NCBI GenBank assembly: GCA_033442325.1
Contig: JAWQFM010000005.1
Span: 250,564 to 314,563 of the forward strand
DNA length: 64,000 nucleotides
Source of the DNA: Salpingoeca rosetta
Taxonomy: Eukaryota; Protista; Choanoflagellata
Reading direction: 5' to 3'
Made by a program: the position numbers and the translations under genes. Below the pieces are notes generated by a model that did not search any database, had not been told where the DNA came from, and was given only the letters and a program-made list of their open reading frames with translations. This document shows, one piece after another, positions 23,223-26,354 of this stretch (its first letter is position 1; each line of letters begins with the position of its first letter).

Positions 23223-23499
23223 GGAGTGAGCAAGCTGTCGATGAGCGAAGGTGTGGTGTGCAGAAACAGCTGCTGGCGCTGTGTGCATGAGCCAAGTATT
23301 GGGCTGTCTGCTATTGTTTGGTAGTCGCTGTAAACGACCATGCCATGGTTGCGGGTGTTGGCCCCATTCTTTTCTTTCTTCCTTTCTTCCTTTCTTTCGT
23401 CTTGTGTCCGCTTCGGTCGCTGTAGCTTGTTGGGTGCATCAACACCCCCATCATCCATCTTCTTTGCATTCGTTCTTTCCTCTTGCGTCCATGTGTTCA

Positions 23500-24395
23500 T
23501 CATTCCGTCTTCCCGGTGTCACAGCCTTTCACACCACGATGCATTGACCCCCTGTTGCTGCTATTTTGTTCCTGAGTAGTAATGCCATTGTCCCCCCTCC
23601 CTTCTGTTCTCGCTGCTGCTGTGTCAACGAATATACGGAATGGTGCAACTGCGCCTTCGTATGGCTGATGGTGTTGCTGGGGCTGATGGTGTTGCTGTCG
23701 CGGTGGTGTCTTGTCGCACGCAAGCGAGCACAGGACACATGTACACAGGTAATTGGACACACACACACAGACACGCAGACACACAGACACACACAGACAC
23801 ACAGACACACACGCACACAGACACAGACACAGACACACAGACACAGACACACACACACACACACGCACACGCACACACATACCTGGTCCTGTCGGATGCG
23901 TGCGTCCATGACCTCAGCGCTCACGGGCGATTCTTCAACCTTTGGTTCAATGGCACTGGCACTGGCCTTGCCGTGTGCTTTGGCTTGCTTGGCGCCTGGC
24001 GATGCTTCTGTGTTGGGGTATGGCGTGCACGCACCAGAATGTGCGCAAGGCCGCCGCAAAGCCGCGCGGTGTGAGGATGAAGGGAGTGACATTGAAGCAG
24101 GGAGAGACGATGGGCAAGGTAAAGGGACAAGGGACGAGGGACAAATCAGTGTCATATACGAACAAACGAACAAACAAACAAACAAACAAACAAACAAACA
24201 AACAAACAAACAAACAAACAAACAAACAAACAAACAAACAAACAAACAAACAAAACAAACAAACAAACAAAACAAACAAACACACACACACGATACTTGA
24301 TTCATCAACAGCCCAGTGATCACGCCTCACCTGCTCTTGCTGCACGTCGCTTTGCATTTCGTCCGGGCGACTGCTGCTGCTGCTGCTGCTGCTGC

Positions 24396-24449
<54 letters not shown>

Positions 24450-25188
24450 TGTTGTTGTTCGTTGTTGTGCCTTGTGTTGTGGCGGTGGGTCGGGTTGGCG
24501 TACCATGCGAGAGTTGACTATGACGGGGATGGCCGTTGAGAATGTTGTTATGGAGGTCGCAACAGCCGGGGTGCCGTTGCCTGTTCTTTGTCCAGCCGAA
24601 GATGGCGAAGGCTTGCCGTGTTGCACAGCATGCTGTCGTGGAGGTGTGGATATCGCGGAAGGCAAAGGCACAGCGACATGAGTTGGGTCGTGTGCTTGCG
24701 GTTGTTGTTGGTGTTGGTGTTGTTGGTGTTGGTGTTGTTGGTGTTGTTGTTGCTGCTGCTGCACAGTTGCTTGGTAGACGACTGGCGGCGTTGCTGTAGG
24801 TGGTAGCAACGACGTGGTCGTAGCGGCCATCGCCTCTGCAGGCGGCAATGGAGGCTGTGGCGCTGTGGCGACGATGTGCACGACCGGAGCGTGCTGTTGC
24901 TCGCTCTCCTTCTTGTGCTTCTTGTGCTTCTTGCTCTTTTTCTTGGTCCTGCTGCTGGACTTTGCGTCCTTGTCTGTCGCTCCAGCAGCCGCTGTTGTGG
25001 CTGACTCATCATCAACATCCGTCTGCTGCTTCTTCTTCGTCTTCTTCTTTTCGTGCTTGTCTTGCTTCTTCTTTTCCTTCTTCTCCATCTTCTTGTTCTT
25101 CTTCACATCACCCTTCTTCTGCTTCAGCTCCGTTTCCGTCTTCTTCTCCTTCTTCTTCTTCTTTCTGGGCTTTGGACTTTGTTGTTGC

Positions 25189-25234
<46 letters not shown>

Positions 25235-25814
25235 GCTGCTGCTGTTGTTGTTGTTTTGGATTCGCGGCAGCGCTGGCATGCGTGCTAGCTGCACTTGCGC
25301 TGGGTGCAGATGTGTTGTGCATGAGGCGCACCCGTAGGACGACCATGTGCGCCTCTGGCTTGAGCTGCGTTGCGCCCTGGAAGAATTTGTACGCTTTTGA
25401 TGCGGGCCAAGGTGCAAGGTCTGGGTAGATGACGAGGTGGTCGTGGCGCAGTGGCTGCTGGAAGTGGGTTGCGAACCCCGCCACAACCAGCTCATGCAGC
25501 TCCTGCTGCAGTGCGAGCGTGCTTGCCACGGTGCCAAAGTCCTGTTCCCTGTACATTTGCCGCCAGGCAGCCAATGAGTGGAAGCGTGTCCGCGTGAGTG
25601 GGTGAGTGAGTGAGTGAGTAGGTGAGTGAGTGAGTGAGTAGGTGAGTGAGTAGGTGAGTGAGTGAGTGAGGTTTGTAATGTGTGTGCACGGATGTTGTCG
25701 TGATGCGTGTACATGGCCACATCCGAGTGCACAGTGCATGAACGATCTTGTGCAAGTCAGAGTGCGTGCATATGTGTGTGTGTGCGATGCAAAGCCGAAG
25801 GTCTGCAAACACAT

Positions 25815-25853
<39 letters not shown>

Positions 25854-25999
25854 GCTTCCTCATTTCTCGCCGTCCCCATCACTGACCTGACAAAGGCAAT
25901 GGACATCTTGACGAGCTGGTTGCCGTGCACCAGCAGCCGTGGACGCACCAGCTCCCTCAGGGCATCATCTTCATCACCACCTCCAGCGTTTCCCGCCAT
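23500..25999 (-). CDS. MAJIN-domain protein (meiotic telomere-attachment MAJIN-like) with Lys-rich region; contains an apparent 1-nt frameshift at 24460
   Basis: Exons 25999-25887, 25548-24331, 24007-23883, 23709-23500. Spliced N-terminus: VRPRLLVHGNQLVKMSIAFVREQDFGTVASTLALQQELHELVVAGFATHFQQPLRHDHLVIYPDLAPWPASKAYKFFQGATQLKPEAHMVVLRVRL. It aligns with one gap to the human MAJIN N-terminal domain as recalled from memory. Confidence 0.75.
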
Positions 26000-26317
26000 C
26001 CTCAAGTGCAGTGCTTGAGTGTGAGTGTGTGAGTGTGTGTGTGTGTGTGTGTGGTGCGAATGCTGAATGTGAAAGTGAGCGACTGCCGATGTTTGGGGGT
26101 GCTGTTGTTTCTGCTGCTGCTGACGTATTGAGACGGCTGCACAGGCAAGTTCCCGCCTTTGGATCGTGGGTTTGTTCACGACAGCTGGTGCTGCTGGTGC
26201 TGCTGGTGCTGCTGGTGCAAACACACAGACACAAACACACTCGCACAACAAACAAGCAACTGCCAGCCAGCTCTGTTTGTTCTCGCTTTGCCTCTCTTTT
26301 GTCTTGCTTGCTTGTCC

Positions 26318-26354
26318 TTCCCGCCAAAAACGGCCAGTGCGCCGCCGGTTCAAA
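26318..26354. promoter_or_regulatory. Candidate E2F (TTCCCGCCAAA) + MYB-like (AACGG) + CHR (TTCAAA, TTTGAA on minus) cluster upstream of the MAJIN-like gene
   Basis: Motifs at 26318-26328, 26329-26333 and 26349-26354, ~320-355 bp upstream of the ATG at 25999. Confidence 0.4.

What the first reader, a model, noticed from the sequence alone, without database searches (positions are those of the whole stretch)
25318..25999. MAJIN domain outside animals: candidate pre-metazoan meiotic telomere-attachment (TERB1-TERB2-MAJIN) system
Seen: joining exon 25999-25887 to 25548 (GT-AG, phase 2) yields VRPRLLVHGNQLVKMSIAF-VREQDFGTVASTLALQQELHELV-VAGFATHFQQPLRHDHLVIYP-DLAPWPASKAYKFFQGATQLKPEAHMVVLRVRL. The human MAJIN N-terminal domain, recalled from memory, is PETRFLHAGPNVYKFKIRY-GKSIRGEEIENKEVITQELEDSV-RVVLGNLDNLQPFATEHFIVFP-YKSKWERVSHLKFKHGEIILIPYPFVFTLYVEM. 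I count 21 identities over 97 columns with a single 1-residue gap, including R.L..G....K..I, QEL, QP....H....P, W......KF..G...L.P. As in MAJIN, the domain is followed by a very basic disordered region (here Lys-rich), consistent with DNA binding. Established: MAJIN with TERB1/TERB2 tethers telomeres to the nuclear envelope in meiotic prophase and is generally described as metazoan. Inference: this machinery predates animals and may act in choanoflagellate meiosis. The domain is split across two ORFs in the six-frame track and is easy to miss.
Basis: partly seen in the sequence, partly recalled or inferred. Interest (0 to 1): 0.92.

Follow-up and report, generated by a model that had tools for sequence, protein, structure and literature searches.

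The report
Possible anchorless MAJIN relative in choanoflagellate
An unannotated, expressed three-exon gene of the choanoflagellate Salpingoeca rosetta encodes a small N-terminal domain that weakly but collinearly resembles animal MAJIN; the same genome has a clear gene for MAJIN's partner TERB2, so this meiotic telomere machinery probably predates animals, but the MAJIN assignment itself is unproven.

Summary
RNA reads confirm the GT-AG splice joining 25887 to 25548 (12 spliced reads, three runs). They also reveal a second intron and a short third exon. The product is 463 aa: a domain of about 115 aa, polyQ, a strongly Lys-rich stretch, a low-complexity tail, and no transmembrane helix.

The spliced domain aligns collinearly with human MAJIN 14-105: 23 identities in 90 columns, z 7.5 against shuffles. 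This is not database-significant (phmmer 13.8 bits, E 0.49 at PDB size). Pfam MAJIN hits neither the exon pieces nor the only homologue found, a Barroeca monosierra protein. Two AlphaFold2 models were too poor to use.

New context: the genome is S. rosetta and encodes a full-length TERB2 (PTSG_06632, Pfam 230 bits). Its MAJIN-binding motif is retained, so a partner is expected. MAJIN Arg14, which pairs with TERB2 Asp191, aligns with a conserved Arg.

- About 0.5: a divergent, anchorless MAJIN-like partner of TERB2.
- About 0.3: chance resemblance.
- About 0.12: another use of the MAJIN/SLX4IP-type fold.

It cannot be filed as a MAJIN family member. An earlier scan report on other DNA of this genome already noted a probable TERB1 and the TERB2 gene.

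The parts
26321..26328 (-). E2F-like motif TTTGGCGG (in context TTTTTGGCGGGAAGG), about 100 nt upstream of the first RNA coverage
   Evidence: The motif count in the window is at chance level (4 found, 5.3 expected), so this is a lead only.
26000..26227 (-). 5' untranslated region (approximate; its end is set by RNA coverage bins)
   Evidence: coverage by reads whose first mate lies on the plus strand in bins 25925-26227, and none above 26228.
25887..25999 (-). Exon 1 coding part: Met1 to the first two bases of Arg38. It holds the acidic N-terminus and the RPRLLVHGNQLVKMSIAFV segment, which aligns with MAJIN strands beta1-beta2.
   Evidence: It is the first in-frame ATG. The segment is conserved in Barroeca P0001.
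25549..25886 (-). Intron 1, 338 nt, GT..AG, phase 2; rich in microsatellites
   Evidence: joint carried by 12 spliced reads in runs X21-X23. Splice sites read.
25319..25548 (-). Exon 2, first part: residues 38-115, the rest of the N-terminal domain (predicted helix, then strands)
   Evidence: 43-46% identical to Barroeca P0001.
25179..25253 (-). PolyQ run, residues 137-161
24882..25172 (-). Lys-rich basic disordered region, residues about 164-260; net +15 in the first 40 aa
   Evidence: The Barroeca homologue has an equivalent patch (+13 in 40 aa from residue 150).
24331..24881 (-). Exon 2, remainder: Q/H/T/A/P-rich low-complexity tail, residues 261-443; no transmembrane segment
   Evidence: The best 19-residue Kyte-Doolittle hydropathy is 1.37, at residues 364-382.
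24008..24330 (-). Intron 2, 323 nt, GT..AG, phase 2; contains a (GTTT)n repeat. Splicing removes the in-frame TGA at 24327-24329.
   Evidence: loose ends at 24010 (17 reads in X21, 14 in X23) whose letters are the end of exon 2. Sequence read, splice sites. The repeat stopped the tool from listing this as a joint.
23947..24007 (-). Exon 3 coding part: the last 20 residues (a basic tail ending CQCH) plus the TGA stop at 23947-23949. The 3' UTR runs on to about 23800.

Best explanation
The locus is a real, expressed, previously unannotated three-exon gene of Salpingoeca rosetta encoding a 463-aa nuclear-type protein. I think its roughly 100-residue N-terminal domain is most likely a very divergent relative of the MAJIN core, the MAJIN/SLX4IP-type beta-grasp.

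Proposed mechanism, all of it inferred: the domain folds only together with the C-terminal MAJIN-binding motif of the S. rosetta TERB2 protein (PTSG_06632), which would wrap around it by strand addition as in animals. The adjacent Lys-rich region would bind DNA non-specifically, like MAJIN's linker basic patches. TERB2 in turn would bind a TERB1-like protein at telomeres.

Unlike animal MAJIN, this protein has no transmembrane helix. Envelope attachment would then have to come from another subunit, for example TERB1-SUN. The membrane anchor would be either an animal addition or a loss in this choanoflagellate lineage.

Shown: gene structure, expression, conservation in a second choanoflagellate, the weak collinear similarity to MAJIN, the basic region, absence of a transmembrane helix, and presence of TERB2.

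Inferred: homology to MAJIN, TERB2 binding, DNA binding, and a meiotic role.
For: - MAJIN chains are the only PDB sequences hit by the exon-2 piece at E <= 10 (E 1.2). Adding exon 1 improves this to 13.8 bits, E 0.49, with one alignment covering almost the whole MAJIN core.
- Smith-Waterman gives z 7.5, and 0 of 3000 shuffles reach the score.
- The Barroeca homologue aligns to MAJIN in the same register (9.5 bits).
- The domain sits at the extreme N-terminus and has the same length as the MAJIN core. A strongly basic patch follows it in both choanoflagellates, as in MAJIN (PMC6297230).
- Several functionally named MAJIN residues align with identical or similar residues. R14, the salt bridge to TERB2 D191, aligns with R21. 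Also K24 with K31, P64 with P70, F73 with Y79, and W79 with W85 (residue roles from PMC6297230).
- A partner exists. Pfam TERB2 covers PTSG_06632 end to end (230.6 bits). Its last 69 residues alone score 40.6 bits on the MAJIN-binding part of the model.
- That TERB2 tail reads IDEFTPGKAPW. Against my own recollection of the human TERB2 sequence, not checked with a tool, this matches the D191/F192/P194/Y199 wedge named in PMC6297230 and PMC6361898, as E, F, P and W.
- The TERB2 N-terminal domain matches human 6j07_A at E 1.2e-8.
- No other MAJIN candidate appeared in the genome. The single Pfam hit, at E 0.33, is low complexity inside an unrelated gene.
- MAJIN is reported to be unstable without TERB2 (PMC6297230), which fits the failure to fold the domain alone.
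Against: - No search reaches significance.
- Pfam MAJIN reports nothing at E <= 10 for the exon pieces or the contiguous Barroeca domain, and does not pick out this locus genome-wide.
- A profile of the two choanoflagellate sequences scores lower than S. rosetta alone (11.4 bits, E 2.3). The tool's filtered version of that search found no MAJIN chain. A true remote homologue usually gains from profiles.
- One shuffle scored 59 against the observed 60.
- At about 1e-5 to 1e-4 per comparison, one such match per genome of about 12,000 genes can arise by chance.
- The 'well-conserved' C-terminal transmembrane helix of MAJIN is absent in both species.
- Dimer-interface residues Y75 and Y104, and most basic-surface residues (K26, R28, R81), are not conserved.
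- Only one homologue exists among 1.84 billion representatives, so the family looks lineage-restricted.
- Language-model neighbours do not include MAJIN, although MAJIN may not be in that library.
Confidence: 0.5

Rival explanations
1. Chance resemblance. The gene is a fast-evolving nuclear protein restricted to the Salpingoeca/Barroeca lineage. Its small alpha/beta N-terminal domain is unrelated to MAJIN, and a basic low-complexity tail follows it. The true TERB2 partner, if there is one, lies elsewhere or is too divergent to see.
For: - All matches to MAJIN are at E 0.5-7.
- Pfam MAJIN is silent.
- The two-species profile is weaker than the single sequence.
- There is no transmembrane helix.
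- Only one homologue was found anywhere.
- Lys-rich and polyQ tracts are common in this genome's coding sequence (and neighbouring ORFs).
- The finding was selected by a reader looking for resemblances across many windows.
Against: - MAJIN is the sole PDB hit rather than one of many.
- The alignment spans the whole domain in order, at the same end of the protein and with the same domain length.
- Positions shared with MAJIN are mostly those conserved between the two choanoflagellates.
- A conserved TERB2 MAJIN-binding motif in the same genome calls for a partner.
Confidence: 0.3
2. A member of the wider MAJIN/SLX4IP beta-grasp group that is not a TERB2 partner. One example would be an SLX4IP-like soluble adaptor that docks on a DNA-repair protein (XPF or SLX4-type) by strand addition. 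Another would be a descendant of the common ancestor of MAJIN and SLX4IP.
For: - The architecture is that of SLX4IP rather than MAJIN: an N-terminal domain of about 120 aa, a long disordered tail, and no membrane anchor.
- The SLX4IP N-terminal domain is a structural homologue of MAJIN (PMC12804970).
- The gene is expressed at a low level in ordinary cultures.
- An E2F-like site lies upstream.
Against: - Pfam SLX4IP (PF15744) finds nothing in the genome or in P0001.
- No SLX4IP chain appears in the PDB sequence searches at E <= 10, whereas MAJIN does. I could not confirm that an SLX4IP chain is in that copy.
- The residue that pairs with TERB2 (R14) is conserved.
Confidence: 0.12

Closest known systems
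MAJIN (membrane-anchored junction protein; Pfam PF15077; PDB 6GNX, 6GNY, 6J08)
   Same: - An N-terminal domain of about 100 residues, collinear with the MAJIN core (23 identities in 90 columns).
- Conserved counterparts of R14, K24, P64, H69, P74, W79, F87 and G90.
- A basic disordered region directly after the core.
- A TERB2 with a MAJIN-binding motif in the same genome.
   Different: - No C-terminal transmembrane helix.
- No Pfam or profile significance.
- Dimer-interface tyrosines Y75 and Y104, and most of the basic beta-sheet surface, are not conserved.
- A much longer polyQ and low-complexity tail (463 aa, against about 250).
- Found in a choanoflagellate, whereas MAJIN is described as mainly metazoan (PMC7227075).
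SLX4IP (Pfam PF15744; N-terminal beta-grasp, structural homologue of MAJIN, PMC12804970)
   Same: A soluble architecture: a small N-terminal domain plus a long disordered tail, with no membrane anchor. Possibly the same fold class.
   Different: No sequence or profile match at all. The weak sequence signal points to MAJIN, not SLX4IP.
TERB2 of S. rosetta, PTSG_06632 (the putative partner, not the window gene)
   Same: A full-length Pfam TERB2 match, with Tyr56 conserved against human 6j07_A and a Phe192-type motif in its tail. It is the protein that animal MAJIN binds.
   Different: It is encoded on another contig (G000:C17). It lacks the C-terminal basic patch of human TERB2.

Membership tests
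MAJIN (PF15077) | Significant sequence or profile match of the N-terminal core to the family | tested here: not met
   Pfam reports no hit at E <= 10 for the exon-1 piece, the exon-2 pieces or the contiguous Barroeca domain. The genome scan with PF15077 does not find the locus. The best pairwise result is 13.8 bits, E 0.49. The spliced S. rosetta protein itself could not be given to Pfam because it has no reference.
MAJIN (PF15077) | Beta-grasp core, beta(2)-alpha-beta(3), with a two-strand appendage | tested here: inconclusive
The AlphaFold2 models have mean pLDDT 52 and 48. The predicted helix and two strands fall where MAJIN alpha1, beta3 and the last strand align, but confidence is low.
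MAJIN (PF15077) | Binds the C-terminal MAJIN-binding motif of TERB2 | not testable with these tools
   Indirect evidence only. The partner motif exists. The Arg aligned with MAJIN R14 is present, and an acidic residue precedes the Phe in the TERB2 tail; its equivalence to human D191 rests on my own recollection of the human sequence.
MAJIN (PF15077) | Basic patches in the linker next to the core (DNA binding) | tested here: met
   Net +15 in 40 aa from residue 164. The Barroeca protein has +13 from residue 150. DNA binding itself was not tested.
MAJIN (PF15077) | C-terminal transmembrane helix (inner nuclear membrane anchor) | tested here: not met
   In the RNA-supported gene model the best 19-residue hydropathy is 1.37, at residues 364-382, and the C-terminus is polar. 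Barroeca P0001 reaches at most 0.77.
MAJIN (PF15077) | Co-occurrence with TERB2 (and TERB1) in the genome | tested here: met
   TERB2. TERB1 rests only on an earlier scan note (s1-432391), which I did not test.
MAJIN (PF15077) | Meiosis- or germline-specific expression | not tested
   The gene is transcribed at low depth in three RNA runs of unknown culture state.
SLX4IP (PF15744) | Sequence or profile match to the family | tested here: not met
   No match in the genome and none in P0001. No SLX4IP chain appears in the PDB searches.
SLX4IP (PF15744) | Soluble protein: N-terminal beta-grasp plus a long disordered tail | tested here: inconclusive
   The tail and the lack of a transmembrane helix fit. 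The fold is not established.
SLX4IP (PF15744) | Binds XPF and SLX4 | not tested

The most novel reading that the evidence does not exclude
The whole TERB1-TERB2-MAJIN telomere-to-envelope complex was already present in the common ancestor of choanoflagellates and animals. Its MAJIN subunit was then a soluble, DNA-binding beta-grasp protein that co-folds with TERB2. On this reading the transmembrane anchor that gives MAJIN its name is a later animal addition, or is replaced here by another attachment, for instance through the short spliced basic tail ending in a Cys-X-X-X box.
Probability: 0.35. Interest if true: 0.8.

Novelty: new variant of a known kind. Interest (0 to 1): 0.6.

Why it matters
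The published view is that TERB1, TERB2 and MAJIN are 'mainly' metazoan and date to the animal ancestor (PMC7227075). No paper in the searchable library mentions TERB2 together with Salpingoeca.

A clear TERB2 in S. rosetta moves at least part of the complex back before animals. If the window gene is its MAJIN-type partner, the core of the complex is older than animals too. The membrane anchor would then be the evolving part, which bears on how telomere-led chromosome movement was wired to the nuclear envelope.

S. rosetta can be induced to mate and can be edited genetically. The hypothesis is therefore directly testable in a unicellular relative of animals.

The gene is also missing from the public S. 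rosetta protein sets searched here, so this is an annotation gain in any case.

Tried and rejected
- Complex prediction with Barroeca P0001 17-138 and S. rosetta TERB2 155-218 returned 'no answer'. This is neither support nor evidence against binding.
- AlphaFold2 on the Barroeca domain with the S. rosetta pieces as alignment gave pLDDT 52. On the S. rosetta exon-2 piece it gave pLDDT 48. Both are unusable.
- ESM Atlas feature searches:
  - The Barroeca domain gave only unnamed or unrelated clusters at 0.82-0.83.
  - The S. rosetta exon-2 piece gave the tyrosine-decarboxylase C-terminal domain at 0.93, but with low recognition and 158 shared features. I treat this as chance or a generic small alpha/beta resemblance.
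- The search for homologous proteins found nothing for the S. rosetta exon-2 product and only P0001 itself for P0001.
- The metagenome scan with the two-species alignment found no relatives. The first attempt failed on gapped rows.
- The human MAJIN 44-106 fragment searched against the genome gave no candidates in the first look, which is uninformative.
- The Pfam MAJIN hit at G000:C13 (E 0.33) is low-complexity sequence inside an unrelated gene.
- The weak P0001 hit at G000:C20 has no coherent ORF.
- P0002, the second hit of the exhaustive search, is a tandem-repeat protein whose E-value comes from summing seven weak repeats. I rejected it as a relative.
- Pfam Cor1 (SYCP3), tried as a way to locate the TERB1-like locus noted earlier, found nothing. 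TERB1 was therefore not checked.
- Step left out: the spliced 463-aa protein, or its roughly 115-aa domain, has no reference and reads through an intron. It was not typed into Pfam, PDB, structure or complex tools. It was analysed only inside scripts.

Full report
**Gene structure**

The minus strand between about 26230 and 23800 carries one transcribed gene.
- The first in-frame ATG is at 25999.
- Exon 1 ends at 25887 and is followed by GTCAGT. Exon 2 starts at 25548, after ...TGTACAG.
- Stranded RNA reads from three 2026 runs carry exactly this joint: 25547/25886 with 'cut +1', CT..AC on the plus strand, in 1, 7 and 4 reads. Reads over the gene have their first mate on the plus strand, as expected for a minus-strand RNA in a standard stranded library.
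- The same call shows 17 and 14 reads ending at 24010 whose overhanging letters are the reverse complement of the last bases of exon 2. Read against the sequence, this is a second GT..AG intron (24330-24008, phase 2). The tool could not list it as a joint because a (GTTT)n repeat lies inside it.
- Splicing this intron removes the TGA at 24327-24329 and adds a 20-residue basic tail that ends CQCH.

The spliced product, built only inside a script, is 463 aa. It consists of a domain of about 115 residues, a polyQ run (137-161), a Lys-rich region (about 164-260, net +15 in its first 40 residues) and a Q/H/T/A/P-rich tail. No segment reaches transmembrane hydropathy; the best 19-residue Kyte-Doolittle mean is 1.37.

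**Organism and annotation**

The assembly has 55.4 Mb in 68 contigs. A gene on contig 17 is 100% identical to NCBI protein PTSG_06632 of Salpingoeca rosetta. The contig is therefore choanoflagellate, not animal.

The window protein is not in the public protein sets.
- A word-indexed search of 5.8 billion clusters found nothing.
- An exhaustive phmmer search of 1.84 billion representatives found no S. rosetta entry.
- The only true relative is P0001, a 362-aa protein of the choanoflagellate Barroeca monosierra from EukProt.
- P0001 matches both the exon-1 and exon-2 parts at 35-46% identity, with a 12-residue insertion at the position of the S. rosetta intron.
- P0001 also has a basic patch after the domain and no transmembrane helix.

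**The MAJIN resemblance**

With the exon-2 piece as query, the only PDB sequences at E <= 10 are the human MAJIN chains (E 1.2).

| Comparison with human MAJIN 11-106 | Result |
|---|---|
| Spliced S. rosetta domain, phmmer | 13.8 bits, E 0.49 at PDB size, one alignment over almost the whole core |
| Spliced S. rosetta domain, Smith-Waterman | 23 identities in 90 columns, R21-V111 against R14-V105, z 7.5; 0 of 3000 shuffles reach it (best shuffle 59, observed 60) |
| Barroeca domain, phmmer | 9.5 bits, E 7.4, same register |
| Two-species profile | 11.4 bits, E 2.3 |
| Two-species profile, tool's filtered search | no MAJIN chain reported |

Pfam MAJIN reports nothing for any piece or for the contiguous Barroeca domain. 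It does not pick out this locus in the six-frame genome scan. The similarity is therefore real in the sense of exceeding shuffles. At roughly 1e-5 to 1e-4 per comparison, however, one such match could occur by chance in a genome of about 12,000 genes.

**Residue-level reading**

The residue roles come from PMC6297230.
- MAJIN R14 makes a salt bridge with TERB2 D191.
- P64, F73, Y75 and Y104 form the MAJIN dimer interface.
- K24, K26, R28, K31, R34 and R81 form the basic surface.

In my alignment:
- Conserved or similar: R14 with R21, K24 with K31, P64 with P70, H69 with H75, F73 with Y79, P74 with P80, W79 with W85, and also F87, G90, L94 and P96. K31 aligns with R38, though in a loop where the alignment is uncertain. 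Most of the strand and helix residues are also conserved in Barroeca.
- Not conserved: Y75 (Asp), Y104 (Arg), K26, R28, R34 and R81.

**The partner**

Pfam TERB2 (PF15101) hits contig 17 of the same genome exon by exon (E 1.3e-23, 4.6e-12, 1e-6, 0.046).
- The annotated product PTSG_06632 (218 aa) matches the whole model, positions 1-207 of 207, at 230.6 bits.
- Its last 69 residues alone score 40.6 bits on model positions 138-207, the MAJIN-binding part.
- Its N-terminal domain matches human TERB2 (6j07_A) at E 1.2e-8 with Tyr56 conserved.
- Its C-terminal motif reads IDEFTPGKAPW. Against my recollection of the human sequence, not checked with a tool, this fits the D191-F192-P194-Y199 wedge described in PMC6297230 and PMC6361898.

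A TERB2 that keeps its MAJIN-binding motif implies a MAJIN-like partner. The only other Pfam MAJIN signal in the genome is a low-complexity stretch in an unrelated gene.

An earlier report of this scan (s1-432391) had already noted a probable TERB1 and 'a clear gene for TERB2' in this genome. I confirmed TERB2 myself and could not locate TERB1.

**Structure**

AlphaFold2 on the Barroeca domain gave pLDDT 52, and on the S. rosetta exon-2 piece pLDDT 48. Only two sequences were available for the alignment. The fold searches returned background.

The predicted helix and two strands of the exon-2 model fall where MAJIN alpha1, beta3 and the last strand align, but this carries little weight. MAJIN is reported to be unstable without TERB2 (PMC6297230), so failure to fold the domain alone is not informative.

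**SLX4IP**

PMC12804970 shows that the SLX4IP N-terminal domain is a structural homologue of MAJIN that binds XPF by strand addition. The window protein shares SLX4IP's soluble architecture. However, Pfam SLX4IP finds nothing in the genome or in P0001, and no SLX4IP chain appears in the PDB sequence searches. The refutation 'a better match to SLX4IP' does not apply. A non-TERB2 role for a MAJIN/SLX4IP-type fold remains possible.

**Weighing**

For:
- a MAJIN-specific, full-domain, N-terminal, collinear match;
- the following basic patch;
- conservation of the Arg that pairs with TERB2;
- a conserved partner motif in the genome.

Against:
- no significant score anywhere;
- no gain from profiles;
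- no transmembrane helix;
- a family seen in only two species.

I put about 0.5 on a divergent, anchorless MAJIN-like TERB2 partner, about 0.3 on chance, and about 0.12 on another use of the fold. The rest is unassigned. Two defining features were tested and not met: a significant family match and the transmembrane anchor. The gene should therefore not be filed as a MAJIN family member. 'MAJIN-like candidate' is the right label.

**Literature**

[quoted passage not shown] No paper in the library holds both 'TERB2' and 'Salpingoeca'. A ranked search on MAJIN together with choanoflagellate terms listed no paper that mentions MAJIN among its 15 best. The Pfam TERB2 label on PTSG_06632 is already in public databases, so the TERB2 part is visible there but not discussed in print.

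**Limits**

The spliced protein has no reference. It was therefore never given to Pfam, PDB, structure or complex tools, and was used only in scripts. TERB1 was not verified. The culture state of the RNA runs is unknown.

Noticed in passing
G000:C17:1012720-1014148 (+), loci L002-L004 and L006: Four-exon TERB2 gene of S. rosetta (PTSG_06632, 218 aa). It matches Pfam TERB2 over the full length at 230.6 bits. It has a YVLTP motif of the [F/Y]xLxP type that PMC7227075 describes at the end of the TERB2 N-terminal domain, a polyQ insert and a conserved MAJIN-binding C-terminus. It lacks the C-terminal basic patch of human TERB2.
   Followed up: yes
window 26314-26328 (-): TTTTTGGCGGGAAGG, a textbook E2F-type site about 100 nt upstream of the first RNA coverage of the gene. 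The TERB2 upstream region (L006 1200-1400) has only imperfect versions, and the motif count in the window is at chance.
   Followed up: partly
window 23947-24007 (-): The small third exon encodes a basic 20-residue tail ending CQCH, with Cys at position -4 (a CXXX box). Together with the upstream basic residues it could be a lipid-anchor signal standing in for a transmembrane helix. It is not conserved in the Barroeca gene model, and His is an unusual last residue for prenylation.
   Followed up: no
window 24701-24762: The His/Gln-coding CAA/CAC repeat shows many 'goes back' joints, base differences and very high depth in RNA reads. This most likely reflects cross-mapping from similar repeats elsewhere, or repeat-length variation. 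It is not evidence of editing.
   Followed up: no
window 23400-23650 (+): A much more highly expressed plus-strand transcript (depth 75-97, first mate on the minus strand) converges on the 3' end of the gene. Minus-strand coverage at 23804-24005 and a GT after CAGGACCAG at about 23881 suggest that the 3' UTR may hold a further intron.
   Followed up: no
P0002 (556 aa, from the exhaustive search): A tandem-repeat protein of about 60-residue units that matched the beta3-beta5 part of the domain seven times (summed E 2.6e-9, 25% identity). It has weak Pfam hits to CTC1 and SHLD2 OB folds. I judged it an artefact of repeat summation.
   Followed up: partly
window 25549-25886: Intron 1 is built largely of microsatellites, (GT)n and CTCACTCA-type repeats. 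The Barroeca protein has a 12-residue insertion exactly at this exon junction, which is either a loop difference or a gene-model error there.
   Followed up: no
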